From contig NIVC01000763.1 of assembly GCA_002269645.1 (NCBI GenBank), forward strand, positions 186,001-250,000: 64,000 nucleotides of DNA, given 5' to 3'. Every line of letters starts with the position of its first letter. Within the stretch, counting starts at the first letter, position 1. The notes beneath the pieces are model-generated. The model did no database searches. It was not told where the DNA came from and worked only from the letters and a program-made list of their open reading frames with translations. The translations under genes and the position numbers were made by a program. The DNA is from Macrostomum lignano. Its lineage: Eukaryota. Shown here one piece after another: positions 7,528-64,000 of the stretch.

Positions 7528-7655
<128 letters not shown>

Positions 7656-11834: not shown

Positions 11835-11986
<152 letters not shown>

Positions 11987-14867: not shown

Positions 14868-15315
<448 letters not shown>

Positions 15316-15697
15316 TCTGTCTGCTACAATTTAACAGATTGGCCTTGACAGAAATCCGACAGCTACTCGATTCTCAGCCTCAATGCTATTCCTTGCCGCG
15401 TTGCACCTGAAGAAACTCGAAACTGCAGTAGAATTTCAATCAGTTCAGACAGCGAATCCCTCCTAAGCCACTGGGATGAAGCTCCCCATGTCTTAATCGG
15501 CTTTCCTGTCACGCGTCAGACTCAATTTCAGTTTTCTTTTTGAAATTAAAATATGAAAATTTCGCTGTAAATGATTAACCACTGAGGCCGGCTTCGGAGA
15601 ATCTCAAGAGCGACATGCTTTGGTGTCTGCAGATTTCTTGAAATGCTCTTCAACTGTTCTCTTCTTTGCGGGCTTGATACACTTCATTCCTGGCGTT

Positions 15698-16896: not shown

Positions 16897-18487
16897 ATAC
16901 TGACACAATTTCTAATCCAACTGACACAATTTCTGATCCTACTGACACATTTTCTGGTTATACTGGCACAATTTCTGATCCTACTGACACAATTTCTGGT
17001 TATACTGACACAATTTCTAATCCTACCCACACAATTTCTGATGCTACTGACACAATTTCTGATCCTACTGACACAATTTGTAACCCTACTGACACATTTT
17101 CTAACCCTACTGACACAATTTCTGATCCTACTGACACAATTTCTGATCCTACTGACACATTTTCTAATCCTACTGACACAATTTCTAATCCAACTGACAC
17201 AATTTCTGATCCTACTGACACATTTTCTGGTTATACTGGCACAATTTCTGATCCTACTGACACAATTTCTGGTTATACTGACACAATTTCTAATCCTACC
17301 CACACAATTTCTGATGCTACTGACACAATTTCTGATCCTACTGACACAATTTGTAACCCTACTGACACAATTTCTAACCCTACTGACACAATTTCTGATC
17401 CTACTGACACAATTTCTGATCCTACTGACACATTTTCTAATCCTACTGACACAATTTCTAATCCTACTGACACAATTTCTGATGCTACTGACACATTTTC
17501 TAATCCTACTGACACAATTTCTAATCCTACTGACACATTTTCTAATCCTACTGACACAATTTCTAATCCTACTGACACAATTTGTAACCCTACTGACACA
17601 ATTTCTAACCCTACTGACACAATTTCTAATAACACCACTATGACCCTACTGACACAAATTCTGATCCTACTGACACAATTTCTAATCCTACTGACACATT
17701 TTCTAATCCTACTGACACAATTTCTAATCCTACTGACACATTTTCTAATCCTACTGACACAATTTCTAATCCTACTGACACAATTTCTGATGCTACTGAC
17801 ACAATTTCTGATCCTACTGACACATTTTCTAATCAGACTGACACAATTTCTAATAACACCACTATGACCCTACTGACACAATTTCTAATAACACCACTAT
17901 GACCCTACTGACACAATTTCTAACCCTACTGACACAATTTCTAATAACACCACTATGACCCTACTGACACAATTTCTAATAACACCACTATGACCCTACT
18001 GACACAATTTCTAACCCTACTGACACAATTTCTAATAACATCACTATGACCCTACTGACACAATTTCTAATAACACCACTATGACCCTACTGACACAATT
18101 TCTGATCCTACTGACACAATTTCTAACCCTACTGACAATTTCTGATCCTACTGACACAATTTCTAATCCTACTGACACAATTTCTAATCCTACTGACACA
18201 ATTTCTAACCCTACTGACACAATTTCTAATCCTACTGACACAATTTCTAACCCTACTGACACAATTTCTAATCCTACTGACACAATTTCTAACCCTACTG
18301 ACACATTTTCTAACCCTACTAACACAATTTCTGATCCTACTGACACAATTTCTGATCCTACTGACACAATTTCTGATCCTACTGACACAATTTCTGATCC
18401 TACTGACACAATTTCTAACCCTACTAACACAATTTCTAATAACACCACTATGACCCTATTAACACACTTTCTGATCCTACTGACACA
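16897..18487. repeat. 21-bp minisatellite (CTACTGACACAATTTCTAATC)n with a 273-bp higher-order duplication and a 35-bp variant unit
   Basis: Variant CTGGTTATACTGG at 16954 and 17227 (13 units apart); explains the NPTDTIS ORFs. Confidence 0.96.
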
Positions 18488-21164: not shown

Positions 21165-21840
21165 CCTACTGACATCTCACCCTACTGACATTTCACCTTA
21201 CTATAATCTTACACTTTTAAAATCTCACCCTACTGACATCTCCTCCTACTGACATCTCACCCTACTGACATCTTACCTTACTGGAATCTTACACTTTTAA
21301 AATCTCACCCTACAGACATCTCACCCAACTGACATCTCACCTTACTGACATCTCACCCAACTGACATCTCACCTTACTGACAACTCACCCTACTGACATC
21401 TTACCTTACTGGAATCTTACACTTTTAAAATCACACCCTACTGACATCTCACCCAACTGACACCTCACCTTACTGACATCTCACCCTACTGACATCTTAC
21501 CTTACTGGAATCTTACACTTTTAAAATCTCACCCTACAGACATCTCACCCAACTGACATCTCACCTTACTGACATCTCACCCAACTGACATCTCACCTTA
21601 CTGACAACTCACCCTACTGACATCTTACCTTACTGGAATCTTACACTTTTAAAATCACACCCTACTGACATCTCACCCAACTGACACCTCACCTTACTGA
21701 CATCTTACCCTACTGACATCTCACCTTACTGACATCTCACCCTACCGACATCTCACACTTCTGACATCCTACCGTACTGATATCTCAGCCCATTAAAATC
21801 TCAGCTCTCTGACATCTCATCCCTCTGAAATCTCACCTCT
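21165..21840. repeat. 16-bp minisatellite (CTGACATCTCACCCTA)n with interspersed CTGGAATCTTACACTTTTAAAAT higher-order block
   Basis: Direct. Confidence 0.93.
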
Positions 21841-23542: not shown

Positions 23543-24285
23543 TCTGACACCCTGAGTCTCCTGACACCTTGAGTTTCCTGACACCTGACACCCCCAACTA
23601 CTGACACCTCCAATCTCCTGACAACTTTTATCTCCTGACACCTCCAGCTTCTGACATCTCCAGCTCCTGACGCCTCCAACTACTGACACCTCTAACTACT
23701 GACACCTCGAGCTCCTGACAATTCCAGCTTCTGACACCTCAAGCTCCTGACGCCTCCAACTACTGACACCTCAAGCTCCTGACGCCTCCAACTACTGACA
23801 CCTCAAACTACTGACACCTCCAACTACTGACACCTCGAGCTCCTGACAATTCCAGCTTCTGATACCTCAAGCTCCTGACGCCTCCAACTACTGACACCTC
23901 AAGCTCCTGACGCCTCCAACTACTGACACCTCAAACTACTGACACCTCCAACTACTGACACCTCCAGCTCCTGACACCTCCAACTCCTGACATCTCCAGC
24001 TCCTGACGCCTCCAACTACTGACATCTCCAGCTCCTGACGCCTCCAACTACTGACACTTCCAGCTCCTGACACCTCCAATCTCCTGACATCTCCAGCTCC
24101 TGACGCCTCCAACTACTCACACCTCCAGCTCCTGACACCTCCAATCTCCTGACACCTCCAATCTCCTGACACCTCCAGCTCCTGACACCTCTAATCTCCT
24201 GACATCCCAATACAAGACACCTCTAAACCCTGACAAGGTTCTGACACGTCCAACTTCCTGACACCTTTAATTCTCTGACACTTAA
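23543..24285. repeat. 16-bp minisatellite (CTGACACCTCCAGCTC)n filling UBE4A intron 6
   Basis: Direct, many variants. Confidence 0.93.
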
Positions 24286-25509: not shown

Positions 25510-25937
25510 CTGGCAGTGTGCAGAAACTGGGACTCGGCCTCCTCCCGCTCCCTCTGGCCACCAGCATCGGGCCAGGCGCCGTCCTGCCGTTGAACCTCAA
25601 GGGTTTTCAGCTGGGTCAGGTAGCTCAGCGCCTCGTCCAACAGAAACGTGGCATCGTTGAGCAGCAGATTGAGAAATTTCAGAAACAAAGGCGCCTCGGC
25701 GTCGTCCAGATGCCGCATTGCCTGACGCGCCAGGAGGCACAGGCGGTCGCGGTGAGCTGGCATGGACCAGAGACAGCGCAGCACGGAGTACATGGGTCTG
25801 CGGTAGCTGAACTTCATCTCGAATTGCACCGACTCGCCTGACAGTTCAATGCTGACGAATACGCTTAGGAGAGAGGCCGCCGTCTGCTGCGCCAGCGGGT
25901 GCGAGGCCAGCAGCTGCTCCCTGCGGTGAGTTGGCAC
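25510..25937 (-). CDS. UBE4A: UBE4A exon 5
   Basis: caccaacag|GTG ... GCC AG|gtgct; QFEMKFSYRRPMY and FLKFLNLLLNDATFLLDEAL are UBE4A hallmark motifs. Confidence 0.95.
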
Positions 25938-25939
25938 CT

Positions 25940-26710
25940 GTTGGTGAATGGAATGGGTTTGGTGAATAGTATAAGGTAAAGTGAATATCAAGAAGTTGGT
26001 GAATGGCATAATGGAGCTGGTGAATGGCATAACGGAGTTGGTGAATGGCATAACGGAGTTGGTGAATGGCATAACGGAGTTGGTGAATGGCATAACGGAG
26101 TTGGTGAATGGCATAACGGAGTTGGTGAATGGCATAACGGGTGAATGGCATAACGGAGTTGGTGAATGGCATAACGGGTGAATGGCATAACGGAGTTGGT
26201 GAATGGCATAACGGGTGAATGGCATAACGGAGTTGGTGAATGGCATAACGGAGTTGGTGAATGGCATAACGGGTGAATGGCATAACTGAGCTGGTGAATG
26301 GCATAACGGAGTTGGTGAATGGCATAACTGAGTTGGTGAATGGCATAACTGAGCTGGTGAATGGCATAGCAAAGTTAGTGAATGGCATAACTGAGCTGGT
26401 GAATGGCATAACGGGTGAATGGCATAACGAAGTTGGTGAATGGCATAACGGAGTTGGTGAATGGCATAACGGAGTTGGTGAATGGCATAACGGAGTGGGT
26501 GAATGGCATAACGGAGTTGGTGAATGGCTTAACGGAGTTGGTGAATGGCTTAACGGAGTTGGTGAATGGCATAACGGAGTTGGTGAATGGCATAACGGGT
26601 GAATGGCATAACGGAGTTGGTGAATGGCATAACGGAGTGGGTGAATGGCATAACGGAGTTGGTGAATGGCATAACGGAGTGGGTGAATGGCATAACGGAG
26701 TTGGTGAATG
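25940..26710. repeat. 21-bp minisatellite (GGTGAATGGCATAACGGAGTT)n filling UBE4A intron 4
   Basis: Direct; 16-bp deletion variants. Confidence 0.97.
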
Positions 26711-26715
26711 CACAC

Positions 26716-27267
26716 CTGCGGAGCACCCTCCTCGCTCGGCAGGGGGCACAGGGCGCAGAGGCCCTCGGCCAGACTGGCCCTGAGATGCGGATTGCGCAGC
26801 AGCCTCGGACAGCCCATAAACAGCAGCAGGAAGGTGAACAGCGGCTCCAGCGAATGCGGACACATCTCCAGCATGTCCGGCCGCTGCTGACGGAAGAACA
26901 GGGCGCACTGGACAACGCCTTCAGCCAGCGATTCCGGCAGCCTATGCAGCCACCAGCAGCCATCGCTGCAGGCATCAATGATGCCGTGATTGCCCTCGGG
27001 CAGGCGGCTCCATCTGGTCGGAGCTCCCGGCGCCTCAAGGGTTGGCGCCGGCGCCAATGCGAAGTGCGTGAGCAGGCGCGAGGTAGCCAGCAGGAAGCCT
27101 AGGAGAGGATCCAGCAGAGCTGGCGACCTCAGGCTGGCCCGGTGAGCCAGGTAATGCGCTGTGAGCCGCTCCAGGGCTGCGGTGTGGGAGGCCATGGCCG
27201 GGTGGCCCTGTGGCATCTGCTGGTGCTGCTGCACGGCGTGCTGGAGCCGGCCCAGCTGCTGCTGCAC
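26716..27267 (-). CDS. UBE4A: UBE4A exon 4
   Basis: cacccgcag|GTG ... CCG CAG|gtgtgc; LPESLAEGV and LRNPHLRASLAEGL. Confidence 0.93.
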
Positions 27268-27293
27268 CTGCGGGTGTGAATTCACCTTCAGGT

Positions 27294-27716: not shown

Positions 27717-27842
27717 CTTGTGGGATGGTGGTAGGAACGTCACTTTATAGATCCCGGGGATAGGATATGACAGATCCCTGATAGATCCCTTTCAAATATA
27801 TATTCTAAAAATTGCTATTCAATATCGATGTAGATAGAAAAT

Positions 27843-28868
27843 TAATGGTCAGATCCCAGTGAATCAATGGTCAGATCCCAGTGAATCAATGGTCAGATCC
27901 CAGTGAATCAATGGTCAGATCCCAGTGAATCAATGGTCAGATCCCAGTGAATCAATGGTCAGATCCCAGTGAATCAATGGTCAGATCCCAGTGAATCAAT
28001 GGTCAGATCCCAGTGAATCAATGGTCAGATCCCAGTGAATCAATGGTCAGATCCCAGTGAATCAATGGTCAGATCCCAGTGAATCAATGGTCAGATCCCA
28101 GTGAATCAAAGGTCAGATCACAGTGAATAAATGGCCAGATCCCAGTGAATCAATGGTGAGATCCCAGTGAATCAAACGTCAGATCCCAGTAAATCAATGG
28201 TCATATCCCAGTGAATGAAACGCCAGATCCCAGTGAATCAATGGTCAGATCCCAGTGAATCAAAGGTCAGATCCCAGTGAATCAAAGGTCAGATCCCAGT
28301 GAATCAATGGTCAGATCCCAGTAAATCAATGGTCAGATCCCAGTGAATCAATGGTCAGATCCCAGTGAATCAATGGTCAGATCCCAGTGAATCAATGGTC
28401 AGATCCCAGTGAATCAATGGTCAGATCCCAGTGTTTTATGTCAGATTCAAGTATTTCATGTCAGATCCCAGAATTTCATCTCAGATCCCAGTATTTCATG
28501 TCAGATCCCAGTATTTCATCTCAGATCCGAGTGTTTTATGTCAGATCCCAGTGAATCAATGGTCAGATCCCAGTGAATCAATGGTCAGATCCCAGTGAAT
28601 CAAAGGTCAGATCCCAGTGAATCAATGGTCAGATCCCAGTGAATCAATGGTCAGATCCCAGTGAATCAATGGTCAGATCCCAGTTAATCAATGGTCAGAT
28701 CCCAGTGAATCAATGATCAGATCCCAGTGAATCAATGGTCAGATCCCAGTGAATCAAAGGTCAGATCCCAGTGAATCAAAGGTCAGATCCCAGTGAATCA
28801 ATGGTCAGATCCCAGTGAATCAATGGTCAGATCCCAGTGAATCAAAGGTCAGATCCCAGTGAATCAAA
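27843..28868. repeat. 22-bp minisatellite (GATCCCAGTGAATCAATGGTCA)n filling UBE4A intron 2
   Basis: Direct. Confidence 0.97.
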
Positions 28869-30957: not shown

Positions 30958-31056
30958 GAAACAGGCGTTTAGCGTCAGTGATGAGCACACCTGGCCCAAG
31001 TGTGTTTAAAGCTGCTGGCTTAAACTTAAAGCTTCAAGATGCCGGGAACAAAGACT

Positions 31057-31137
31057 AGATCCCAGGATCAAAGGTCAGATCCCCGGGATCAAATGTCAGA
31101 TCCCCGGGATCAAATGTCAGATCCCCGGGATCAAAGG
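31057..31137. repeat. Short 21-bp array (GATCCCCGGGATCAAATGTCA)n
   Basis: About 4 copies. Confidence 0.9.
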
Positions 31138-31179
31138 TTAAAAGTAGATGCCAGCAACAAAATTAGAAGTCTATAAGAT

Positions 31180-31520
31180 AAATTGTTTACGAGGGATTGG
31201 GAATCGAACCCCCCGACATTCAAGTCGTGAGTCTGACGCTCTAACCACTAGGCTACAACCACTGATCCGGGATCAAATTTTTTGTGTTCTTGAGCAAGAC
31301 ATTTAACTCTGCATTGCTTCAGTTGTAAAATGGGTGCCAGCATTAGCTGGGATAATTGAGGGTGTGTGGCAACCCCCCAGTCCTTGGACTGAACAGCCGA
31401 ACGCAGCCTTCAGATGCGGCTGAGCTGTCGTTTGCAAATCTGGCCCAACTGGGGCAGGAGTAATCAACTATTATTATTAGTATTCGAAAAACGTAATTTC
31501 TTTTTTTTCTTTTGTTAAAA
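31180..31520 (+). mobile_element. tRNA-derived CORE-type SINE (family A) with an inverted head
   Basis: Head 31180-31260 lies on the minus strand (GGTTGTAGCCTAGTGG...GGTTCGATTCCC; A and B boxes); body 31283-31520 lies on plus and matches the 51443 copy. Confidence 0.88.
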
Positions 31521-31689: not shown

Positions 31690-32378
31690 AAAATCCCAGA
31701 ATCAAATGTCAGATCCCAGAATCAAATGTCAGATCCCAGAATCAAATGTCAGATCCCAGGATTAAATGTCGGATCCCAGGATTAAATGTCAGATCCCAGG
31801 ATTAAATGTCAGATTCCAGGATTAAATGTCAGATCCCAGGATCAGATGTCAGATCCCAGGATTAAATGTCAGATCCCAGGATTAAATGTCAGATCCCAGG
31901 ATCAGATGTCAGATTCCATGATCAGATGTCAGATCCCATGATCAAATGTCAGATCCCAGGATCAGATGTCAGATTCCATGATCAAATGTCAGATCCCATG
32001 ATCAAATGTCAGATCCCGGGATCAAATGTCAGATCCCAGGATCAGATGTCAGATTCCATGATCAAATGTCAGATCCCATGATCAAATGTCTGATCCCGGG
32101 ATCAAATGTCAGATCCCCAGGATTAAATGTCAGATCCCAGGATCAGATGTCAGATCCCAGGATTAAATGTCAGATCCCAGGATTAAATGTCAGATCCCAT
32201 GATCAAATGTCAGATCCCATGATCAAATGTCAGATCCCAGGATTAAATTTCAGATCCCAGGATCAAATGTCAGATCCCAGGATTAAATTTCAGATCCCAG
32301 GATTAAATGTCTGATCCCAGGATCAAATGTCAGATCCCAGGATTAAATTTCAGATCCCAGGATCAGATGTCAGATCCC
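31690..32378. repeat. 20-bp minisatellite (GATCCCAGGATYAAATGTCA)n
   Basis: About 34 copies. Confidence 0.96.
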
Positions 32379-32925: not shown

Positions 32926-34341
32926 TCACACTGGCGACCGTCTGGGCGCGTGAGCCACCGCCACCCGATGATGCTGCTGCTGATGGTTGCCATGGAAACG
33001 CCGGCCAGTCAGGCCGAACGTCTCCCTGTTGAGCGCATTCTGCCTGGCGGCCTCTTTGCGGCCCAGCCTGGCTGAGTCGCCACCGGCGGCGGCGCCGGCA
33101 TCTGCGTCGACCCGGCTGATGTCGTCGAAGAAGCTGCGGTCCCGGTCGTAGCCGGCGCCGCCCAGCTGATGCTGGCCATCGGCAACGGCGGCGGCCATCA
33201 GAGCCGACGCTGACGACGAAGCGACGGCGCCGTTGACGCCATTAGTCGAAGAAGCCGAATTCTCCTCATCCGAGGCGCCGTTGATGCCGCCGTTGGCAAC
33301 GACGACCTGCTTAGCAGAAGTGGAATTAACTGCCGTGAGCAATAATTTCGCCATCTCGGCGTTGGCCGTCTCAAAATCATAATCGGCGGAGAAATATTTG
33401 GCCGGATTGGCCGAAGCCTCAGCAATGCCGTTCGACTGGTGCGTCCGGCGCGAGTTACGGCCGCGGCCGCCGCCTCCACCGCTGCCGATCAAACGCGGCG
33501 ATAAGCGAAGCCGCTGAGCTCCTGGGCCGCCGCTGCCGCCGCCCTGAACTCGTCGAAAGTGCATCACGGGCCGGCCGCCTCCGCCGCCTCCAGCCGATGG
33601 CCTCATCCCGTAGCCATGGTTACCAGGCGCTGCGGCAAACTCGACAGCGGGGTACATGCTAGCCGGGCGATACTGCGGGTAGTAACCGGCTCCGTTGCCT
33701 CGATAGCTGACATTGTACCTGGGATAGACGATGTAGTCGTTGCGAGAACGCGGCTGCTGCTGCGGCGGGGACTGCATCGGCAGCTGCATCATCGGCGGCG
33801 GCGGCGCCAGATGCGGATGCTGCGGTGGCGGCGCCTGCTGCTTCATCTGTTGAGTCTGGCCGCGACCACCGGATCTGCCGCCAGCGCCGCGGCCAGCCGA
33901 GATGCCCCTGGGCTGGCGCCGCCGGCCGCCGCCTCCACCAGCCGCCCTGCCTCCCGTGGCCTCGCCGCCTCCACCGGTTCCGTTGACAGCCGACGAGCTT
34001 GAAGATGCATTGGCGTTACCGGGTCCCTTCACCTGTACGCGGATAATAGCAGGGTCGGGCACCGGCCGGGACAGTGGAGTGTCAATCACTCGCAGCTCAG
34101 TGATGTCCGCGGCCCGGAAAATGATGTACTCGAATGTTTCGGAAGACGGCGGCACCCGACGCTCGCACTGGCGCTCCTCGGTGCCGAATACTCGCACGTG
34201 GTCGAGCGTGACAGACGCCTCCTTCTGGTCGATGCTGTGTAGGAAGCCTTCGTACCGAATCCCGGCTTTGGATAGCAACGATATCGTGGACCCGATGTAG
34301 GGCACTTGAGACGCGGACGAAGAACCCGATGGCGGTGCCAT
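32926..34341 (-). CDS. LSM14: LSM14/RAP55/Trailer hitch/Scd6 family P-body protein, single coding exon, about 471 aa
   Basis: N-terminal LSm14 domain PYIGSTISLLSKAGIRYEG; RGG-rich linker; DYDFETANA (FDF-type), SFFDDIS (FFD) and NRETFG (TFG) motifs; first ATG at 34341 (the track start at 34383 is GTG). Confidence 0.93.
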   Translation of the reverse strand: MAPPSGSSSASQVPYIGSTISLLSKAGIRYEGFLHSIDQKEASVTLDHVRVFGTEERQCERRVPPSSETFEYIIFRAADITELRVIDTPLSRPVPDPAIIRVQVKGPGNANASSSSSAVNGTGGGGEATGGRAAGGGGGRRRQPRGISAGRGAGGRSGGRGQTQQMKQQAPPPQHPHLAPPPPMMQLPMQSPPQQQPRSRNDYIVYPRYNVSYRGNGAGYYPQYRPASMYPAVEFAAAPGNHGYGMRPSAGGGGGGRPVMHFRRVQGGGSGGPGAQRLRLSPRLIGSGGGGGRGRNSRRTHQSNGIAEASANPAKYFSADYDFETANAEMAKLLLTAVNSTSAKQVVVANGGINGASDEENSASSTNGVNGAVASSSASALMAAAVADGQHQLGGAGYDRDRSFFDDISRVDADAGAAAGGDSARLGRKEAARQNALNRETFGLTGRRFHGNHQQQHHRVAVAHAPRRSPV

Positions 34342-34964
34342 TCGCTCTGGCTCACTTGAACTACTCGGTTGATTCGCAGACACTTTAAAAAGAAACTTTT
34401 TACGCGATTAGACAAGTCTCGCTCGCTTCGAGACCCTTCTCTCTGCCTTTTTCTCTTCTAGCAGACAGGTCCGCGGAATCGATAGCTTTGCCAGCGACAC
34501 TTTCGGCCATAGACTATGAATAAAACCCTCTTACTCCTCTTAGCTGAAGGCTACGAGAAAGCTTTAACTTGATGTGAAAGCTAGAATATTTTTTAAAAGT
34601 GCAACACCAAAGCTTGCAGCCTGGGCTCTGGGACATAGACAACACAATCAAAGAGAAAAAAGATAGCTACTGAGAAAAATACAAGCAACTAATTGAAGCT
34701 TCGTCTGACATCAGTTAGTAAAGTGGAGCGCCAGTTAATTAAAAGTACATTGAGTTATCGATTGCTATCAGAATGGGGAATAAAAAGGGGCACTCAGCCC
34801 GGAGGGCTTGGTGCGGCTTGGGAGTTACTGACTGGTGATCTTGCATTGCTGGTGAGCGGCCCGTGTTTCAGGAAGATACCGCGCTCTGTGCTGATTTTGA
34901 GCTGCTATTGCGCTAGGTGAACCTACCTGTGCAGTTGGAGCCAGAGGGTAAACGGACTGCCTGG

Positions 34965-35222
34965 TAAGGCCTCATGCGCAACACCCGGCCGACCCGGCTG
35001 GCTGGCGAGGGGCCCAGCCAAGGTAAGTCGCAAAAATGCTCACCCGACAAAATAGACGTACATGTATTACTAATTAGATGTCGAGGCATTAAGCCTTAAT
35101 AAGACAGTCAAGTTGCTCCTGCTGTTTACCCGAAATTAGTTTATTTTGCTTTAGGGTTTTTTCACAGGTTAGTCGCATTTTTGGTCGCATTGCCAGTGTA
35201 AATCAGGGGGTTGCGTATGTAT
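34965..35222 (+). repeat. Diverged direct repeat, copy 1 (partner 37092-37333), containing a GT-AG intron-like segment
   Basis: GGCGAGGGGCCCAGCCAAGGTAAGTCGCAAAAATGC vs GGCAAGGGGCCTAGCCAAGGTAAGTTGCAAAAATGC. Confidence 0.8.
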
Positions 35223-36174
35223 GCTCATGCGTGAGCCCTAGAAGTAGCATGCCCTGTCTGAAGGTGGTACCCACCAGGAATTTGGATTCTAGGCTTTGGG
35301 TGTGTTCGGCGCCTGGGTGAAAGGCTATCATCTGTTTGTGGCACGCACCACCTGGTAGTGCAATTGCCTACCAGTATAGTTGCCTACAGTGACCCTGTCT
35401 GGAGGGAAATTTTCGCCAGAGGATGATAGTCTCTGAGGAGGCTGGACCTAGTCCATTAAATGCAGTTTGTAGGAGTCAGACTGTGCAATAAAAATTCGCT
35501 TTGCAGCATGGACCCCAAAATTTTTGCCCTTGAAGGTGCCCAATCTTGCCTGTTATAGCTTAGGCTCACCCTCCAGCCTCTTTTCAAAATAGTATGCAAA
35601 TCTTTGTGATGTAGCCTTACAATTAGCTTTGTGCTATGAAAAGGATTCTATTCCAGGTGGCCTAGGTCTTGTATCCCTGATAGACCCACCCTTCTATTCA
35701 TCTCCACACTGGAGCCTTAATTTGGGCTGATCGGCGATTAGCCCTGCTAAGCACCCCATTTAACAACAACAAAATGGAATAGTTAAAAAATCTGTTATGC
35801 TAAGGCTTCCAGATTTTTTCTCTGTAGGGTTGCTTTATAAAGGTTGATATCAAACATTTGTTTAAAGGGTAGAAAATATTAGAATTTTAGAATTTTCTAA
35901 TGTCTCATTTCTCTTTTCTCTCTGGCAATTAATGACTAATTAAATGCCACAATCTTATGGCAAACTATCTTATGGCAAACTATCTAACTCAATTTGAAGT
36001 GACTTAATAAATCAATAGCCATCTATTAGCATCTTTAATAATGATCTTAGAAAAAAACCAACACTTATATTCTGAGAAATAGGTTGTTAACTCTATTAAC
36101 ATGAAGACATTAGACATGAATTTACAGTTTACCCAAAACTATATAACTAACCATAACTAACCTAGTAAAAATTG

Positions 36175-36357
36175 GGTTTTAGCTTAGTGGTTAGAGTGTC
36201 AGACTTATAACTAGAGGATAAAGGGTTAATCTTAGCCTATTTGAAACAATTTGTCTTTAAGCAAGAAATTTAACCTTATATTGCTTTAGTTCCCCTAGCT
36301 ATAAAATGAGTATTAGTATTAGCTAGGATAATTAAGGGTATATAGCAGTTCCTAGTC
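36175..36357 (+). mobile_element. Hypermutated copy of SINE family A
   Basis: Colinear with the 51443 and 31180 copies from A box through CORE; differences dominated by CA>TA and TG>TA. Confidence 0.88.
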
Positions 36358-37091
36358 ATTTCGTATCTGCCATTTCATCATCTGGGGTGTCTGGTTTTCT
36401 CACCTCAACTAGGGTCACTTTGTCATCTTAATTAGCATTCACTACTTGAAGAGAGTCATTTTGTCATCCACCAATCTCCAATCATATTAGTTCCAACTTC
36501 CAAGAAAATTAATGTGGCGATCAAACATTTACTTGGAATCTTAATGATCCCACCCATTTTGTCATCTTGATTGATAAAACCTGTCAATCAATTGGTTCTG
36601 CTTGCTGCAGCTTAATAGTCAATAAAAACAAAAAATAGTTTACACTAACTCAAATTGCATACAGTTTGATTGGTTGATGACAAAGTATTCACTATAACTA
36701 AATATTTGATCACTTTGTCATATTATTTTTCAAGCTTCTTTGCTTTTTCTAGTCACTTTGTCATCCAATTTGACAAAATAAAATATGATGATCTGACCAG
36801 TGACCTATATAGCAACTTTGTAGTTCTTAGACTAAATAGCTATATAAGCCTTTAGATATATAATGCAATAGTTGTGGCTGAGCTATTAGTTAGGATAAGT
36901 GTAATTAATTATCTATTATTATAATTATTAAATCTTATTATTAAAACATTCATATGTAACAAAATCAAGTATATAAAAGTATTTATAGAATAGGCTTTGT
37001 TTAAAATAGCATAGTTAATAAAAAAATAAAACAAAATAAATAAACTATTACAAAACCAATATATAAAAAAGTATTAAACCTAATATATATG

Positions 37092-37333
37092 GGTCATACC
37101 CAGCTGACATGGCCAATCTGGCCAGCTGGCAAGGGGCCTAGCCAAGGTAAGTTGCAAAAATGCCTACCAAAAAAATAGACAGAACTAATTAGATGATAAA
37201 AGCATTTAGCCTTACCAAATTTTAATTTAAACCATTAATTTTTGTTTATGTTTTTATAGGGAAGTCACACTTTTAGTCAAAAAGTAAACATTTTGCATTG
37301 CTGGTATAATGCAGCCTGGGATTGTGAATGTAT
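37092..37333 (+). repeat. Diverged direct repeat, copy 2 (partner 34965-35222)
   Basis: See copy 1; cut at its right end by the MITE. Confidence 0.78.
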
Positions 37334-37335
37334 TA

Positions 37336-37727
37336 GGCTTTTCACAAAGATTGGTTCTAGAACTAGAATAATTCCAATTCCAGAACCAGAATTTGTAGGA
37401 AAATGAAAAGCTTCAAACACATTTTTTGTTTGTTAGTCTATACAATTTAATTTTGTCTTTCCTTGACTTTGTTTCCTCTTGGATATGACAAAAAACGGAA
37501 TAATTAATACCAATAATAAAAAATGCCAATTTCAAATACTTTACTGTTAAATACTTTTACTGTTAATTAAAGTGTAAACATGACTTCTCGTCTCAAGTTC
37601 TCGAGAAAACTGCTCGACCCAAATTCCAGAACCAGAACACGGTTCTGGAACCGATTCTGAAAACGGAACAGACAATATGAAAAGCTTCGAACCGATTCTG
37701 GTTCTGGAATTGGTAATATGAAAAGCC
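37336..37727. mobile_element. ~392-bp MITE with TIRs GGCTTTTCA...TGAAAAGCC and TA target-site duplication
   Basis: TA|GGCTTTTCA at left, TGAAAAGCC|TA at right; subterminal CCAATTCCAGAACCAGAAT inverted at both ends; no ORF. Confidence 0.8.
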
Positions 37728-39478
37728 TATATGAAATCTAGCATATTATCTTTGTTCTTCATTGAAAGCATAGTTGTAAATTGCAATTAGGTCTATCTAA
37801 AATAACACTTTTCATATAAGAAATTGATACATGAATCCAGATTTCCCTTTTAGTTTACAATAAATAAATATAATGTATATATATGATGAGATGAAATAGG
37901 TACCCTAAAATTAATTTGTCACTTTTTAAAACTAAAACGGTCCCACAAATTCTACGAAGTTAAATATTATAACAAACAAATTATTTATTACGGATTCAAA
38001 ATCTTTTTTGTCCACGCTGACTAGCAAGTTGAGAATCTGTAGAGCTAATGAAAAAATCGAAATGCTGTCTGGATAATTTTCTCTCAGAAAATGTAAGAAA
38101 ATTTGATTCCATCCCCTTTATGTTCATAAAATGAAAAACTGAAAACGCATTTAAATCAAACTAATTGATGGATCAACTGACAGGCTGTTTATAATTATAA
38201 GGTGCTTAGCATTAATGCTGAACAATTAAACAGTTACATGCACCATGTTTATCCCAAGGAACACTGGTTTATGCACGGTACAAACTACTCTCGGCTTGCA
38301 GCAGGTATAGTACATATGTACATGTTATCGTGTGCTTATAGTGTTGTCTACGTGCAAAGATCTTTTTGGGCCTGAAGAACCACAGCTTTTACTCGATTTC
38401 AGGCTGGGTTATGCCTCAGGCTGTGCCTCAGGCTCGGAGGCACCGCGCGCAGGTGTCGCGGTCTCTGATGCAAAAACCAATCAGGATTTTTGATGCCTTT
38501 GCTTTTTTAGTAGATCATTCATCTTACACATGTAAGCGCAGCATTTCTATATCCTATATGAATGAAGAAGGTAACGAAAAATCCAATAATAACTGAATAT
38601 GGAATGCCACATTGATTATTGATTCACGGAAAAGACATATATATCAATAATGCTAATAAAATTAGGACAGAGCGGCAAAACCCAATAAAATTTCTCTTCT
38701 GTTACCAAGTGAACGCGGGCTTGTGGATTATTCAAGATTTGAGACCAACCTTGAGCTGACGAACAGATGGATAGCGATGACTGACGCATTTTTCGGTGTG
38801 AGAATGCATCAATTCGGCATTGCAGATCATTATTATAACTGCAGGCAGCTAATCAGCCGAAATTTAATAATATAATGACGAATACCTAAATACCGAACTC
38901 TAGCTCATACCTAAAGAGGCGAATCACCGGATTTTCACTTCAGTAATTATTAAAGGTAATTAAGCTAATGAAAAATTAAATAAAACATTCAAGTTCAAAA
39001 ATAAATCTCAAATATAGAAAATTTTTAGCTTTTTTATTTGTTTCTCAATTGGATCTTGAGTCGAATCAGGAGTGCGAGGGCCAAAATGTGGTGTGTCAAC
39101 GCGACACCCAAACCCTCATTCGCGGACCGATTGAGGCTGACTGCAATTAGTCTGTTCAATTTACGCAGAACAGATTCGCTAAAGTTTCGCTAAAATTATC
39201 ATAACTTTCCTTAGGGCAGAACTATAACTTTCATAGTGTTGCTATGTTTTTTCACAGGGTTTGGTGGGTATAGCGTTGCCAACCCAGGTCCCAATTCTAG
39301 AATCCCTTGTCTTAGCTTGATTAGGCGCATGCTGTCTCATTGGAATTCTGAGCAGATGCGGGCTCCATCAGCCTGCTCAGCTTTTACCCGATGCCGCCCC
39401 GTCGGCATTGGCTGAGGCGCAACGCTATAAAAACGGCATCGCCAAAACTCCTCCCTGACAGCAGGCAACACTGAGAAC

Positions 39479-39983: not shown

Positions 39984-41377
39984 TCTCAAGCGGAGTCGGC
40001 GAAGTTTCTCAACAGGCCGGCGCCTTGTCGTCAGGTAATTTCGCTGAGGCAGACTTTAAGTTAGTAAGCAGCTTTAACGGCTCCGCTGCCACGCGCACTT
40101 TTCGCGGCCTTCCGCCGCTGGTGGAATCGACGGAGGACGATGAGCATGAGCCAGTCTCCGACGGAAGTCGACAGCAGCGTCCGCAGCAGCCACTGCCGCA
40201 GAAATCCGATGAAGAGCAGCCGGACTGCTCCGTTTACAGAGGCCGAGAAGACATCCCAGCTCACTGGCGTCGACCGTTTGCCGTCGGCCTGCCATTCGTC
40301 ATCGTGATTGGAGGATTCGGCTGCGCCGCCACCGCGCTCGCCTTCACCCGCCTCGGCCGTCGCAATCTGCCAGTCTGCTGTTATCTTGCCGTAGTGTCCT
40401 GCGTTGACGTTCTGGAGCTGCTCATCCGAGCTGGAGATCTCTGGCTACGCGCGGTCTCCAGCACCGAAGTGACGTTTATGCTGGTGTTTGCCTGCCAGAC
40501 CTGCTGCCAGGTTTATCCGATGGTATACAATTTTGCGCACCAGTTGCGGCAGTTCTGCTGCGTAGCCGCCGCAGTGGACACTCTGCAGCTCTACAATCGG
40601 CCTGCCCAAGCTTACAGCCGACTAACCCGGGATCGAGTGTTCAACAGCTGCGCCCTGTTCTGCGCCATCCTGCTCAGCGTCAACTGCCAGTTTCTCTGGA
40701 CGTTCAGCTTGTCGCGCACGGACGGGGACAGCCCGGCAGGAAACCGGGGCTACCACTGCGGCTTCTCGGACAAGTGGGTGTCGCTCGTCTATCGATCGCT
40801 GGTCTGGCCGGGACTTGACTTCTTTCTCGGCGACTTTCTGCCAACTGTCGCGGCTATCTGCTGCGGCGCCGGCGTTCTCTGCCTGCGCATTCGACGACGA
40901 CATCACGCGACGGCGCGAGGAGCTAGCGACGCGGCTGTCAAGGAGGAGCTGCGACTGGCGGCACTGCTGGCCTCAGTGGGCTGGCTGCCGCTCTGCTTAC
41001 CCGAAGTCGCATTCCATGCCTACCGCCTGTGGTCAAGCGCCGAGCACACGCTCCGGCACCACATTCTGCCGCCGCAGAGTCTCCGCCGACTGTTGGACAA
41101 TCGACAAGCGCACCTGGGCTGGGCAGATCGAAAAAACCAGCAGGTGTTTTATTTTAGCGTCGACACGAGCTGCTGGCTGGCCCGGCTAGTCTGGCTGTGC
41201 GGTCGAGCCGCGCTTTTGGCGTTGGCGTCGCCGCCGTTTCGAAAGGAAATCGGACAGATTTTCCTGCGACCAGTTCTGAAGCTTGCGGAGCCGGCGATGA
41301 TGCGGTGGGGCTGTGGCCGGAACCACCGGGCTGACGGCGAAGCAGAGATTGTTGAGATGGTATCTAGCGAAGTGTGA
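39984..41377 (+). CDS. Divergent class A-like 7TM receptor, exon 2 (seven TM segments)
   Basis: Acceptor cacccacag|TC; seven hydrophobic segments, TM3 Cys and ECL2 YHC, TM5 WPGLDFFLGDFLP, helix 8 SPPFRKEI; total 590 aa. Confidence 0.8.
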
Positions 41378-41397
41378 TCGAACTGTTTTCTGTAGAA

Positions 41398-41722
41398 TTT
41401 TTATTAGAGGCAGGGGCTGCGTGCACCCTGGTGCACTTTAAGCGACATTGTCGCACAACCGGCGAGAGGCATTGCTGCATATTCCGCCGACTCCCCTGAG
41501 AAGGCACACAAGCGCGCGGATACGTACGCAGTCATACGCACAGGAACACACTCACACAGGAGAGTACAGCGGCCTTGGGGTTGGCCTTCAAGGGCGTTAA
41601 TTGCACGAGCAGACCCAAGCCGAGATTCCAATTTAGCCCTAAATTAATGTGACTGCATTCGGGATCGAGTCTGGGCCGCAGGCAAATAAGAGAGCCGTGC
41701 TAGACCACTAGGCTACGGCTCT
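41398..41722 (-). mobile_element. tRNA-derived SINE (family B), apparently full length
   Basis: Minus strand: AGAGCCGTAGCCTAGTGGTCTAGC (A box), GACTCGATCCC (B-box-like), A-rich tail; about 175 bp shared with 53068-53299. Confidence 0.82.
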
Positions 41723-47978: not shown

Positions 47979-48084
47979 GTGAGTGTTGAGATGCTGTTGG
48001 CTTTGCGCTTCTCCACAGCTCACAACTGGGTGCGATTCTGGGCCACAAAACCAATGTAGGGCTTTCTGTAATTTTTAGGACATT

Positions 48085-48099
48085 GTCTGTGTGTCTGTG

Positions 48100-48147
<48 letters not shown>
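48085..48147. repeat. (TGTC)n microsatellite in ABCA paralogue 1 intron 3
   Basis: Direct. Confidence 0.95.
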
Positions 48148-48148
<1 letters not shown>

Positions 48149-51442: not shown

Positions 51443-51790
51443 GGTTGTGGCCTAGTGGTCAGAGCGTCGGACTCGCGACTTGAAGGTCTGGGGTTCGATT
51501 CCCGATCCTACTGGAACAATTGTGTCCTTGAGCAAGACCACTTAACTCTGCATTGCTTCAGTTCACCCAGCTGTAGAATGGGTGCCAGCATTAGCTGGGG
51601 TAATTGAGGGTGTGTGTGGCGACCCCCCAGTCCTTGGACTGAACAGCCGTACGCAGCCTTCAGATGCGCCGCGCAATAGCTGCGGCTGAGCTGTCGGTTG
51701 CACATCTGGCCCCATTGGGGCAGGTGTAACCAACTATTATTATTATTAGTATTCGAAATACGTAATTTCTTTCTTTTTTCTTTTGTTTCT
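51443..51790 (+). mobile_element. tRNA-derived CORE-type SINE (family A), intact orientation
   Basis: A box TGGCCTAGTGG, B box GGTTCGATTCCC; CCTTGAGCAAGACCACTTAACTCT...TCAGTT...CTGTAGAATGGG resembles the MIR/CORE consensus; (ATT)n tail. Confidence 0.9.
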
Positions 51791-52374: not shown

Positions 52375-52695
52375 CAAATGAGAATGAGAGTGAGAATGAG
52401 AATGAGAATGAGAAGGGAGCCAAAATGAGAGTCGACATCGTCATTCATCATGGTTACCGTGCAGAGAGCTGCAGAATGTCTGTCCTAGTGTCTTAGTGTC
52501 TTAGTGTCTTAGTGTCTTAGTGTCTGTCTGTCTATCTGTCTGTCTGTCTGTCTGTCTGCCTAACCCCTCACCCCTCACCCCTCACCCCTCACCCCTCACC
52601 CCTCACCCCTCACCCCTCACCCCTCAACCCTCAACCCTCTCCCCTCACCCCTCACCCTTCAACCCTCAACCCTCTCCCCTCTCCCCTCTCCCCTC
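52375..52695. repeat. Cluster of short repeats: (GAGAAT)n, (TAGTGTCT)n, (TGTC)n, (CCCTCAC)n
   Basis: Direct. Confidence 0.9.
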
Positions 52696-62599: not shown

Positions 62600-64000
62600 T
62601 TTCTGACAGATTCTCTACACAGATGCTGACAGATGCTGACAGATGCTGACAGATTCTCTTGACAGATGCTGACAGATGCTGACAGATTCTCTTGACAGAT
62701 GCTGACAGATGCTGACAGATTCTCTACACAGATGCTGACAGATGCTGACAGATGCTGACAGATTCTCTACACAGATGCTGACAGATGCTGACAGATGCTG
62801 ACAGATTCTCTTGATAGATGCTGACAGATGCTGACAGATTCTCTTGACAGATGCTGACAGATGCTGACACATTCTCTTGACAGATGCTGACACATTCTCT
62901 TGACAGATGCTGACACATTCTCTTGACAGATGCTGACACATTCTCTTGACAGATGCTGACACATTCTCTTGACAGATGCTGACAGAATCCCTTGACAGAT
63001 GCTGACACATTCTCTTGGAAGATGCTGACACATTCTCTTGACAGATGCTGACAGACTCTCTTGACAGATGCTGACAGATGCTGACACATTCTCTTGACAG
63101 ATGCTGACAGAATCCCTTGACAGATGCTGACACATTCTCTTGGCAGATGCTGACACATTCTCTTGACAGATGCTGACAGACTCTCTTGACAGATGCTGAC
63201 AGATGCTGACACATTCTCTTGACAGATGCTGACACATTCTCTTGACAGATGCTGACACATTCTCTTGACAGATGCTGACACATTCTCTTGACGGATGCTG
63301 ACAGATGCTGACACATTCTCTTGACAGATGCTGACACATTCTCCTGACGGATGCTGACAGATGCTGACAGATGCTGACACATTCTCTTGACAGATGCTGA
63401 CACATTCTCTTGACAGATGCTGACACATTCTCTTGACAGATGCTGACAGAATCCCTTGACAGATGCTGACACATTCTCTTGGCAGATGCTGATACATTCT
63501 CTTGACAGATGCTGACAGACTCTCTTGACAGATGCTGACAGATGCTGACACATTCTCTTGACAGATGCGGACAGATGCTGACAGATGCTGACACATTCTC
63601 TTGACAGATACTGACAGAATCCCTTGACAGATGCTGACACATTCTCTTGGCAGATGCTGACACATTCTCTTGACAGATGCTGACAGACTCTCTTGACAGA
63701 TGCTGACAGATGCTGACACATTCTCTTGACAGATGCTGACAGAATCCCTTGACAGATGCTGACACATTCTCTTGGCAGATGCTGACACATTCTCTTGACA
63801 GATGCTGACAGACTCTCTTGACGGATGCTGACAGATGCTGACACATTCTCTTGACAGATGCTGACGCATTCTCTTGACAGATGCTGACGCATTCTCTTGA
63901 CAGATGCTGACAGAATCCCTTGACAGATGCTGACACATTCTCTTGGCAGATGCTGACACATTCTCTTGACAGATGCTGACAGACTCTCTTGACGGATGCT
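62600..64000. repeat. Modular array of 10-bp (GATGCTGACA) and 13-bp (CATTCTCTTGACA) blocks with a 125-bp higher-order repeat; runs off the window end
   Basis: GAATCCC variant at 62985/63110 and 63617/63742 (125 bp apart). Confidence 0.96.

What the first reader, a model, noticed from the sequence alone, without database searches (positions are those of the whole stretch)
35800..37400. RIP-like CpA>TpA hypermutation in an animal genome
I aligned the 77 nt starting TTAAC at about 36270 with SINE copies at 51542 and 31304. Thirteen of 16 CpA/TpG sites are TpA (8 TG>TA, 5 CA>TA), against 3 of 21 other C/G sites where the sister copies agree. Example: CCAGCTGTAGAATGGGTGCCAGCATTAGCTGGGGTAATTGAGGGTGTGTGGC becomes CTAGCTATAAAATGAGTATTAGTATTAGCTAGGATAATTAAGGGTATATAGC. 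Head CpGs are also lost (CG>TG, CG>TA). Changes on both strands with CpA preference are the hallmark of fungal repeat-induced point mutation (Neurospora, RID-dependent), which I do not know to be established in animals. The surrounding ~1.5 kb is TpA-rich and almost CpG-free, while nearby exons are CpG-rich. Inference: a locus-targeted C-methylation/deamination system (non-CpG DNMT3-like or a deaminase) acting on repeats. Caveat: the young tandem arrays remain CA/TG-rich.
Basis: partly seen in the sequence, partly recalled or inferred. Interest (0 to 1): 0.88.

Follow-up and report, generated by a model that had tools for sequence, protein, structure and literature searches.

The report
One C-to-T hypermutated SINE in flatworm
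One old SINE copy in the flatworm Macrostomum lignano carries far more C-to-T changes, on both strands and mostly at CpG and CpA, than its neighbours, which looks like fungal repeat-induced point mutation (RIP) but rests on a single copy and is not a locus-wide or currently active system.

Summary
The window is Macrostomum lignano contig NIVC01000763.1:186001-250000. A tRNA-derived SINE copy (36175-36347 plus 36815-~36970) is split by a 458-bp MITE-like insertion. Against two sister copies it shows 59 C>T/G>A changes, 5 T>C/A>G and 10 transversions.

Mutated fractions are CpG 13/18, CpA 24/38, CpC 9/33 and CpT 6/33. There is no 5'-neighbour effect, and C>T and G>A are interleaved.

The signature is confined to the SINE, not spread over 1.5 kb. 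The nested insertion, the left flank, a duplicated segment 170 bp away and more than 20 minisatellites lack it. The insertion's 9-bp target duplication (TATATAGCA) is already in mutated form, so the changes came first.

The 3'-neighbour specificity and strand symmetry argue against APOBEC/AID and ADAR. They fit a DNA-methyltransferase-type process (5mC at CpG and CpA, then deamination). Published reviews state this species retains DNMT1 and DNMT3.

Canonical RIP is not supported: the other SINE copies and the tandem arrays are untouched. With only three copies reachable, a burst cannot be separated from slow copy-specific decay. A genome-wide per-copy analysis is decisive.

The parts
36175..36347 (+). 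5' part of the hypermutated SINE copy: tRNA-like head (A box TAGCTTAGTGG kept, B box lost) and body up to the insertion point.
   Evidence: blastn to 51443-51611, 71% identity. 92% identity in the purine/pyrimidine alphabet. Alignment. Weak tRNA match of 20.6 bits with the T-arm missing. TpA o/e 1.38, CpA/TpG o/e 0.55, no CpG.
36339..36347 (+). Target-site duplication, left copy (TATATAGCA). It is already in the mutated form of the consensus GTGTGGCA.
   Evidence: Read from the sequence and the alignment.
36348..36805 (.). Nested 458-bp MITE-like insertion. It has about six copies of AGTCACTTTGTCATCC in both orientations and weak terminal inverted repeats. It does not carry the hypermutation signature.
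   Evidence: the repeat finder. TpA o/e 0.59, CpA/TpG o/e 1.49, TpA/ApT 0.59.
36806..36814 (+). Target-site duplication, right copy (TATATAGCA), identical to the left copy.
36815..36970 (+). 3' part of the hypermutated SINE copy. It aligns to about 36925; the (ATT)n tail and 3' end beyond that cannot be aligned.
   Evidence: blastn and purine/pyrimidine hits to 51609-51700. Alignments. TpA o/e 1.56, CpA/TpG o/e 0.66, no CpG.
36926..37093 (.). Very AT-rich stretch (GC 16%) after the SINE. It is probably a decayed tail/microsatellite. It has a weak RIP-like index and no ancestor to compare with.
   Evidence: A purine/pyrimidine-alphabet match to the 58.9-kb minisatellite was judged spurious.
51443..51787 (+). 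Young full-length reference copy of the SINE, with intact A and B boxes (GGTTCGATTCC).
   Evidence: tRNA model 22.1 bits with a complete T-arm.
31270..31516 (+). Second reference copy, 5'-truncated body with two deletions.
31181..31262 (-). Head fragment of a SINE copy on the opposite strand. It shares several states and a 1-bp deletion with the old copy, so it belongs to the same subfamily.
37094..37214 (+). Local control: a duplicate of 34972-35098 containing CCAAG|GTAAGT. It has lost all CpGs but kept its CpA/TpG, with an ordinary substitution spectrum.
   Evidence: 14 C>T-type changes of which 8 are at CpG, 3 T>C, 10 transversions.

Best explanation
A roughly 345-bp tRNA-derived SINE copy inserted in an AT-rich, CpG-poor non-coding stretch, probably the first intron of a plus-strand GPCR-like gene. 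While resident as double-stranded DNA it accumulated dense cytosine-to-thymine changes on both strands, aimed at cytosines followed by a purine. Every CpG was lost, about 60% of CpA/TpG became TpA, and CAG was hit hardest.

The most likely mechanism is copy-specific cytosine-5 methylation by a DNMT-type enzyme, which reads the 3' neighbour and works on either strand of duplex DNA, followed by deamination of the methylated cytosines. The deamination could be spontaneous over time or enzyme-assisted in a burst. The process ended or became irrelevant before a MITE-like element inserted into the copy.

A smaller, sense-strand-only excess of C>T at CpC/CpT is probably transcription-associated deamination of the non-template strand.

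Shown: the spectrum, the context, the strand symmetry, the confinement to the element, and the order of events relative to the insertion. Inferred: methylation as the cause, the targeting mechanism, and the tempo.
For: Spectrum: 59 C>T-type changes against 5 T>C-type and 10 transversions. Three-way parsimony puts 47/5/7 on the old-copy branch in 233 columns.

Context: CpG 13/18, CpA 24/38, CpC 9/33, CpT 6/33. CpR versus CpY gives p=1.5e-6. CAG is 12/14 but CTG only 3/15. There is no 5'-neighbour effect, and C>T and G>A are randomly interleaved (runs test z=-0.13).

Strand symmetry at CpA (10/15 top, 14/23 bottom) and at CpG (7/9, 6/9). On the bottom strand CpA is 14/23 against CpY 3/34, p=5e-5.

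Confinement to the element:
- The nested insertion has TpA o/e 0.59 and CpA/TpG o/e 1.5.
- The left flank is normal.
- The duplicate 170 bp away has an ordinary spectrum (SINE versus duplicate p=8e-4).
- Minisatellite singleton variants show C>T 45, T>C 55, transversions 89, with no CpA excess.

Timing: both copies of the insertion's TSD are TATATAGCA, the mutated form.

Identity and enzymes: the contig belongs to assembly GCA_002269645.1, accession NIVC01, the M. lignano Mlig_3_7 assembly. Reviews state this species keeps DNMT1 and DNMT3 and has low-level 5mC (PMC11292947; PMC9246332; PMC10658182). DNMT3A/B and the rotifer N4CMT are described as methylating CpG and, more weakly, mainly CpA/TpG (PMC10406627).

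Local CpG depletion: CpG is nearly absent from 35.1 to 37.2 kb while neighbouring exons have CpG o/e of about 1. This fits a locally methylated patch in a mostly unmethylated genome.
Against: Only one mutated copy is available, so targeting and tempo are unproven.

The CpA conversion rate (about 25 times the transversion rate per site) is as high as fully methylated CpG would give in mammals. From my own knowledge, non-CpG methylation that dense in an animal germ line is not established.

The flanks and the nested element lost CpG without losing CpA. So if methylation is the cause, its CpA component must have been limited to the SINE.

The two other SINE copies show almost no CpA>TpA, although one has about a third of the old copy's clock-like changes.

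The polarity of the changes rests on the intact B box of the young copies and on parsimony. It does not rest on a family consensus.
Confidence: 0.4

Rival explanations
1. Ordinary slow decay. This is simply the oldest of the three copies, sitting in an AT-rich, historically CpG-methylated patch. It decayed under a strongly GC-to-AT-biased, context-dependent spontaneous mutation spectrum. The apparent confinement arises because the flanks are already near equilibrium and the nested element is younger.
For: The copy is older by clock-like changes (12 T>C plus transversions, against 4-5 for the 31-kb copy). It has indels and a lost B box. The surroundings are GC 28-30% with CpG o/e 0-0.16. Part of the C>T excess is strand-asymmetric (CpY 12/32 versus 3/34), as expected for transcription-associated deamination.
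Against: The per-site C>T to T>C ratio is about 10-13, implying an equilibrium GC below 10%, yet the flanks sit at 28-30%.

The element overshoots its flanks in TpA excess and CpA/TpG deficit (1.4-1.6 and 0.55-0.66, against 0.76-0.89 and 1.1). A context-free simulation does not reach this.

The duplicate at 37094-37214 has a comparable transversion distance, keeps abundant CpA/TpG and has 6 non-CpG C>T against 10 transversions. It may be under constraint, however.

Minisatellite variants show no C>T bias and no CpA excess.
Confidence: 0.25
2. A true RIP analogue. A homology-sensing, germline or premeiotic pathway detected the SINE as repeated DNA and mutated it in one or a few bursts, as RID/Dim-2-dependent RIP does in Neurospora.
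For: The changes are transitions only and on both strands. CpA is preferred. The RIP indices are positive (TpA/ApT 1.55, (CpA+TpG)/(ApC+GpT) 0.71). The signature is confined to a repeated element, with weak shoulders of about 170 bp that could be leakage. The excess over clock-like changes suggests a burst.
Against: Two other copies of the same family within 15 kb are not mutated. More than 20 tandem arrays up to 1.6 kb long remain CpA/TpG-rich; by my knowledge of Neurospora these would be ideal RIP substrates. CpG is hit at least as hard as CpA, unlike the Neurospora order CpA>CpT>CpG>CpC (my knowledge). The literature searched describes RIP as fungus-specific. No RID-like gene could be looked for.
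Confidence: 0.1
3. Editing before or during integration. The SINE RNA or cDNA was deaminated by an AID/APOBEC-like or other single-strand deaminase, and the edited copy was then inserted.
For: The confinement to the element would follow automatically. There is a sense-strand-only excess of C>T at CpC/CpT (12/32 versus 3/34).
Against: C>T and G>A are both frequent and randomly interleaved (35 and 24, runs test z=-0.13). Known retroelement editing is strand-biased G>A, and a screen of 19 invertebrate genomes found none (PMC4866542). The specificity lies in the 3' neighbour with none at the 5' neighbour, the opposite of AID/APOBEC (my knowledge). ADAR editing would give A>G, the wrong direction given the intact B box of the young copies.
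Confidence: 0.07
4. An AT-rich ancestral subfamily. The TpA states were already present in the source gene of an older subfamily, so the copy is not mutated at all.
For: The old copy shares several A/T states and a 1-bp deletion with the head fragment at 31181-31262, so subfamily structure exists. A three-sequence tree cannot be rooted.
Against: About 47 changes are private to this copy, and nearly all are of one transition type. The B box needed for Pol III transcription is destroyed in it but intact in both other heads. A source gene with this sequence could hardly have been active.
Confidence: 0.05

Closest known systems
Fungal repeat-induced point mutation (RIP; Neurospora RID and Dim-2 pathways)
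   Same: Almost exclusively C:G>T:A transitions, on both strands. There is a strong CpA>TpA preference. TpA/ApT is high and (CpA+TpG)/(ApC+GpT) is low. The signature is restricted to a repeated element.
   Different: CpG is hit at least as hard as CpA. Other copies of the same repeat and all tandem arrays in the window are untouched. The element is only about 345 bp. The organism is an animal, and RIP is described as fungus-specific. No evidence of homology sensing or premeiotic timing exists here.
Deamination decay of 5-methylcytosine in methylated transposons (DNMT1/DNMT3 systems; DNMT3 side activity on CpA)
   Same: Total loss of CpG. Specificity set by the 3' neighbour. Action on both strands of duplex DNA. 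CpA, especially CAG, is the next-best context. The host is reported to retain DNMT1 and DNMT3.
   Different: The CpA rate here is far higher, relative to the clock, than known non-CpG methylation levels would give (a few percent per site in the stick insect and mouse ES cells). The CpA effect is limited to the SINE, whereas CpG loss extends over about 2 kb.
AID/APOBEC editing of retroelements
   Same: Clustered C>T/G>A hypermutation of a retroelement copy.
   Different: Known editing is strand-biased (G>A on the sense strand) and depends on the 5' neighbour. It was reported absent from 19 invertebrate genomes (PMC4866542). Here the changes are symmetric, interleaved and depend on the 3' neighbour.
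Bdelloid rotifer N4CMT (4mC on transposons at CpG and CpA/TpG)
   Same: An animal system that marks transposons with cytosine methylation of the same CpG plus CpA/TpG specificity (PMC10406627).
   Different: 4mC deaminates to uracil, which is rapidly removed, rather than to the more mutagenic T:G mismatch (same paper). The enzyme is a horizontal acquisition of rotifers. Nothing links it to flatworms.

Membership tests
Fungal RIP | Mutations are C:G>T:A transitions almost exclusively | tested here: met
   59 C>T-type against 5 T>C-type and 10 transversions. 47/5/7 on the old-copy branch.
Fungal RIP | Dinucleotide preference for CpA, giving TpA excess and CpA/TpG deficit (RIP indices) | tested here: met
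   CpA 24/38 against CpC 9/33 and CpT 6/33, p=6e-5. TpA/ApT 1.55 and (CpA+TpG)/(ApC+GpT) 0.71, outside a context-free simulation. CpG is hit equally hard (13/18), which is not the Neurospora order.
Fungal RIP | All sufficiently long copies of a repeat, and tandem duplications, are mutated | tested here: not met
   The copies at 51.4 kb and 31.2 kb carry 0-1 private C>T. More than 20 tandem arrays keep high CpA/TpG and show no C>T bias. These sequences may be younger than the event.
Fungal RIP | Mutation confined to the duplicated segment, with limited leakage | tested here: met
   The signature covers 36175-36347 and 36806-~36970, with weak shoulders. It is absent from the nested insertion and the flanks.
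Fungal RIP | Dependence on a RID/Dim-2-type cytosine methyltransferase homologue and premeiotic timing | not testable with these tools
AID/APOBEC retroelement editing | Strand bias (G>A on the sense strand, in runs) | tested here: not met
   35 C>T and 24 G>A, interleaved, 29 runs against 29.5 expected.
AID/APOBEC retroelement editing | Preference set by the 5' neighbour (TC, CC, WRC) | tested here: not met
   By 5' base: C 18/36, G 17/43, T 9/21, A 8/27. The effect lies at the 3' base.
5mC deamination under DNMT1/DNMT3 methylation | Loss of CpG to TpG/CpA in the affected DNA | tested here: met
   No CpG is left in the old copy. About 11 ancestral CpGs became TA (6), TG (3) or CA (2) (alignment).
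5mC deamination under DNMT1/DNMT3 methylation | The host encodes DNMT1 and DNMT3 and has 5mC | not tested
   Taken from the literature only: M. lignano is reported to keep DNMT1 and DNMT3 and to have low 5mC (PMC11292947, PMC9246332, PMC10658182).
5mC deamination under DNMT1/DNMT3 methylation | The affected cytosines are methylated in the germ line, including CpA | not testable with these tools
   No methylome data are accessible. The 2022 review says genome-wide patterns are unknown in free-living flatworms.
tRNA-derived SINE | tRNA-like head with Pol III A and B boxes, non-coding body, repeat-like 3' tail, dispersed copies | tested here: met
   The young copy has TGGCCTAGTGG and GGTTCGATTCC and matches the tRNA model over 71/71 positions at 22.1 bits, below the gathering score of 29. 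ARAGORN calls no tRNA. There are three dispersed copies with an (ATT)n tail.
MITE / non-autonomous DNA transposon (the nested insertion) | Target-site duplication, terminal inverted repeats, small size, no coding capacity | tested here: inconclusive
   The 9-bp TSD is perfect and the size is 458 bp. Subterminal repeats of one 16-nt motif occur in both orientations. The terminal inverted repeats match at only about 11 of 16 positions by eye, and no other copy is in the window.

The most novel reading that the evidence does not exclude
Macrostomum lignano, a flatworm that unusually retains DNMT1 and DNMT3, has or once had a transposon-directed cytosine hypermutation pathway. It would be a functional analogue of fungal RIP that converts CpG and CpA (especially CAG) to TpG/TpA on both strands of individual repeat copies. 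Genome-wide there would be a discrete class of SINE and other transposon copies carrying this signature.
Probability: 0.12. Interest if true: 0.85.

Novelty: new variant of a known kind. Interest (0 to 1): 0.5.

Why it matters
Mutational inactivation of repeats by directed C-to-T change is regarded as a fungal speciality. In animals, the known transposon hypermutation is strand-biased APOBEC editing in vertebrates.

A two-strand signature specific to CpG and CpA, confined to one SINE copy, is seen here in a flatworm that kept DNMT1 and DNMT3. It hints that cytosine methylation can act as a local mutagen on animal transposons well beyond CpG.

If many copies show it, this would link DNA methylation, transposon defence and genome composition in a spiralian model that can be manipulated by transgenesis and RNAi. 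If they do not, the copy is a curiosity. The assembly is public, so the test is cheap.

Tried and rejected
Attempts to get more SINE copies all failed:
- A protein search with a SINE-derived ORF found nothing.
- Four DNA pattern scans of the metagenome and prokaryote genome collections found nothing.
- Only one window gene (LSM14-like) is on record in the assembly's annotation. It is the only called gene within 10 kb on either side and its 90% cluster has no other member. So neither duplicated loci nor more of the contig could be fetched.

Other dead ends:
- A search with an ABCA-like ORF gave no close relative.
- Rfam at gathering thresholds and ARAGORN found nothing in the window.
- A purine/pyrimidine-alphabet search for hidden, heavily transition-mutated copies of the SINE found none.
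- An all-against-all search in that alphabet was dominated by low-complexity matches.
- An apparent match of 36962-37311 to the 58.9-kb minisatellite (129 bits against a null maximum of 99) was rejected because the region has no 21-bp periodicity.
- A supposed 400-bp non-coding duplicate at 41.4/53.2 kb shrank to a 177-bp repeat. It was too similar and too short to serve as a spectrum control.

Alternative mechanisms rejected:
- Plant-like symmetric CHG methylation: CAG 12/14 but CTG 3/15.
- ADAR hyperediting of an AT-rich ancestor (the mirror-image polarity): both A>G and T>C would be needed on one RNA strand, and the young copies have the intact B box.
- An assembly or bisulfite-type artefact: the effect is local, context-specific and predates a transposon insertion.
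Full report
**What the window is.** A single-exon LSM14-like gene (32926-34341, minus strand) matches exactly one public record: NCBI assembly GCA_002269645.1, contig NIVC01000763.1. This places the window at 186001-250000 of that contig. Papers tie GCA_002269645, NIVC00000000 and Mlig_3_7 to the free-living flatworm Macrostomum lignano. They describe a genome in which simple and tandem repeats make up 15%. The window fits that description. It holds UBE4A-like exons (best relatives about 40% identical, from rotifer, tick, spider and gastropod). It also has GPCR-like and ABCA-like genes with very long exons and more than 20 minisatellite arrays. So the source is an animal genome.

**Anatomy.** The window contains three copies of one tRNA-derived SINE.
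- A full young copy lies at 51443-51787, with A box TGGCCTAGTGG and B box GGTTCGATTCC. It matches the tRNA model end to end at 22.1 bits, below threshold.
- A 5'-truncated copy lies at 31270-31516. It abuts a head fragment on the other strand at 31181-31262.
- The diverged copy under study runs from 36175.

That copy is split. Its body stops at 36347 and resumes at 36815. Between the halves lies a 458-bp element flanked by a perfect 9-bp duplication, TATATAGCA (36339-36347 and 36806-36814). The element carries about six copies of the motif AGTCACTTTGTCATCC in both orientations, as in a MITE. The duplicated 9-mer is the already mutated form of consensus GTGTGGCA. So the changes discussed below came before this insertion.

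**The observation.** I then excised the insertion and inferred the ancestor from the two sister copies. Over the whole element there are 35 C>T and 24 G>A, against 3 A>G, 2 T>C and 10 transversions. A three-way parsimony count over 233 well-aligned columns puts 47 C>T-type, 5 T>C-type and 7 transversions on the old-copy branch. The 31-kb copy has 1, 1 and 3. In a purine/pyrimidine alphabet the old copy is 92% identical to the young one, against 71% in ordinary letters. The divergence is therefore almost entirely one kind of transition.

**Context and strands.**

| Context | Mutated / sites |
|---|---|
| CpG | 13/18 |
| CpA | 24/38 |
| CpC | 9/33 |
| CpT | 6/33 |

- CpA against CpC+CpT gives p=6e-5, and CpR against CpY gives p=1.5e-6.
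- No CpG survives. By reading the alignment, about 11 ancestral CpGs became TA (6), TG (3) or CA (2).
- Within CpA, CAG is hit hardest (12/14), while its complement context CTG is not (3/15). This excludes a symmetric CHG-type rule.
- The 5' neighbour has no effect: C 18/36, G 17/43, T 9/21, A 8/27.
- C>T and G>A are randomly interleaved along the element (29 runs, 29.5 expected).
- Split by strand, the CpA and CpG components are symmetric: 10/15 and 14/23, 7/9 and 6/9.
- The CpC/CpT component is not: 12/32 on the sense strand against 3/34 on the other, p=0.008.

So there seem to be two layers. One is a strong, strand-symmetric CpR-specific process; on the bottom strand CpA is 14/23 against CpY 3/34, p=5e-5. 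The other is a weaker sense-strand process. I attribute the second, by inference only, to transcription-associated deamination of the non-template strand. The copy lies between a splice-donor-like site at about 35024 and a plus-strand GPCR-like ORF at 40025.

**Locus or element.** It does not. Normalised for base composition:

| Segment | TpA o/e | CpA/TpG o/e |
|---|---|---|
| SINE halves | 1.38 and 1.56 | 0.55 and 0.66 |
| Nested insertion | 0.59 | 1.49 |
| Left flank 35761-35999 | 0.76 | 1.1 |
| 37215-38000 | 0.76 | 1.1 |

The element has 51 TpA against 35.8 in shuffles (p=5e-5) and 17 CpA+TpG against 29.7 (p=1e-3). Its indices are TpA/ApT 1.55 and (CpA+TpG)/(ApC+GpT) 0.71. A simulated context-free C>T decay of the young copy gives 1.07 and 1.05, so the observed values lie outside its 95% range. 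A sliding scan shows the signature rising at about 36000, collapsing inside the insertion and returning at 36800-37100.

Two internal controls have ordinary spectra.
- A duplicated 125-bp segment (34972-35098 and 37094-37214) lies 170 bp from the SINE. It differs by 14 C>T-type changes (8 at CpG), 3 T>C and 10 transversions. The AT-side copy keeps abundant CpA/TpG. The SINE's ratio of non-CpG C>T to other changes is higher, p=8e-4. This segment may be functional, so it is an imperfect neutral control.
- Singleton variants in 23 minisatellite arrays give C>T 45, T>C 55 and transversions 89, with no CpA excess. The SINE differs from this spectrum at p=1e-12.

What is regional is CpG loss. CpG o/e is 0-0.33 from 35.1 to 37.2 kb, against about 1.0 in the neighbouring exons.

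**Polarity.** A three-sequence tree is unrooted, so direction needs outside evidence.
- The two other heads keep a perfect B box, while the old copy has lost it.
- The 47 changes are private to one copy and of one type.
- The mirror-image reading, an AT-rich ancestor hyperedited A>G, would need both A>G and T>C on one RNA strand.

The old copy does share a few A/T states and a 1-bp deletion with the head fragment at 31181-31262, so subfamilies exist. Those positions were excluded from the counts. A full family consensus is still needed.

**Mechanism.** Dependence on the 3' neighbour, indifference to the 5' neighbour, and symmetric, interleaved action on both strands describe an enzyme that reads CpN on duplex DNA. 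That points to a cytosine methyltransferase type, not a single-strand AID/APOBEC deaminase. Retroelement editing by APOBECs is strand-biased G>A and was not found in 19 invertebrate genomes (PMC4866542). DNMT3A/B and the rotifer N4CMT are described as methylating CpG and, more weakly, mainly CpA/TpG (PMC10406627). M. lignano is reported to retain DNMT1 and DNMT3 with low overall 5mC and unknown genomic pattern.

My best account is therefore copy-specific methylation at CpG and CpA followed by deamination. This produces a RIP-like outcome.

The weak point is quantity. In rate terms CpA conversion (1.0) is about 25 times the transversion rate (0.04). That is what fully methylated CpG gives in mammals (my knowledge), whereas reported non-CpG methylation in animals is a few percent per site (for example). 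This could mean an enzyme-assisted burst, that is, a real RIP-like activity. It could also mean an unusually dense non-CpG mark. One copy cannot decide.

**Against canonical RIP.** Two other family members within 15 kb and all the tandem arrays are unmutated. CpG is as affected as CpA. The literature searched treats RIP as fungus-specific.

**Against plain ageing.**
- The per-site C>T to T>C ratio is about 10 or more, which would drive GC below 10%, while the flanks sit at 28-30%.
- The element overshoots its flanks in dinucleotide bias.
- The neighbouring controls are normal.

**What could not be done.** No further sequence of this genome was reachable.

**Verdict.** It is wrong about the extent, which is the element and not the locus. 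It is unproven as a system. I rate it a possible new variant of methylation-linked transposon decay, of moderate interest. There is roughly a one-in-eight chance that it marks a genuine RIP-like pathway in an animal.

Noticed in passing
36348-36805: A 458-bp MITE-like element is inserted in the old SINE. It has a perfect 9-bp TSD (TATATAGCA) and about six copies of AGTCACTTTGTCATCC in both orientations. There is no other copy in the window.
   Followed up: partly
34972-35098 and 37094-37214: A duplicated segment of about 125 bp (73% identical) ends in CCAAG|GTAAGT, a 5' splice-site-like junction. It may be a duplicated non-coding first exon of the plus-strand GPCR-like gene (ORF 40025-41377). 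The downstream copy has lost all its CpGs.
   Followed up: partly
whole window, e.g. 16898-18440, 21165-21837, 23584-24223, 27840-28867, 62603-64000: Many different minisatellites share the core CTGACA/TGTCAG. The hexamer occurs 273 times against about 31 expected. Several arrays lie in introns of the UBE4A-like gene.
   Followed up: no
11836-11986, 15127-15322, 7528-7662, 48084-48148, 52477-52558: The tetranucleotide microsatellites form a series linked by single transitions: (CCTG)n switching to (TCTG)n within one array, and (TCTA)n ending in (TCCA)3(TCTG)2. It is unclear whether this reflects C>T mutation spreading by slippage.
   Followed up: no
31181-31516: A SINE head fragment on the minus strand abuts a 5'-truncated body on the plus strand. 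They sit between two related minisatellites (31042-31138 and 31693-32378). This is either two insertions or an in-place inversion.
   Followed up: partly
41398-41574 and 53298-53131: A GC-rich dispersed repeat of about 177 bp, in inverted orientation and 85% identical, lies upstream of each of two tandem ABCA-like paralogues (ORFs from 43236 and 53401).
   Followed up: no
33001-34400 and 40001-41400 versus 35100-37200: Exons have CpG o/e of about 1.0-1.2 at GC 60-67%. A 2-kb non-coding patch has CpG o/e of 0-0.33 at GC of about 30%. This suggests rare, local germline methylation in a mostly unmethylated genome.
   Followed up: partly
25846-27285 (minus strand): A 21-bp minisatellite (25994-26710) lies inside a long open reading frame that also contains UBE4A-like sequence. 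I did not determine whether the array is intronic or translated.
   Followed up: no
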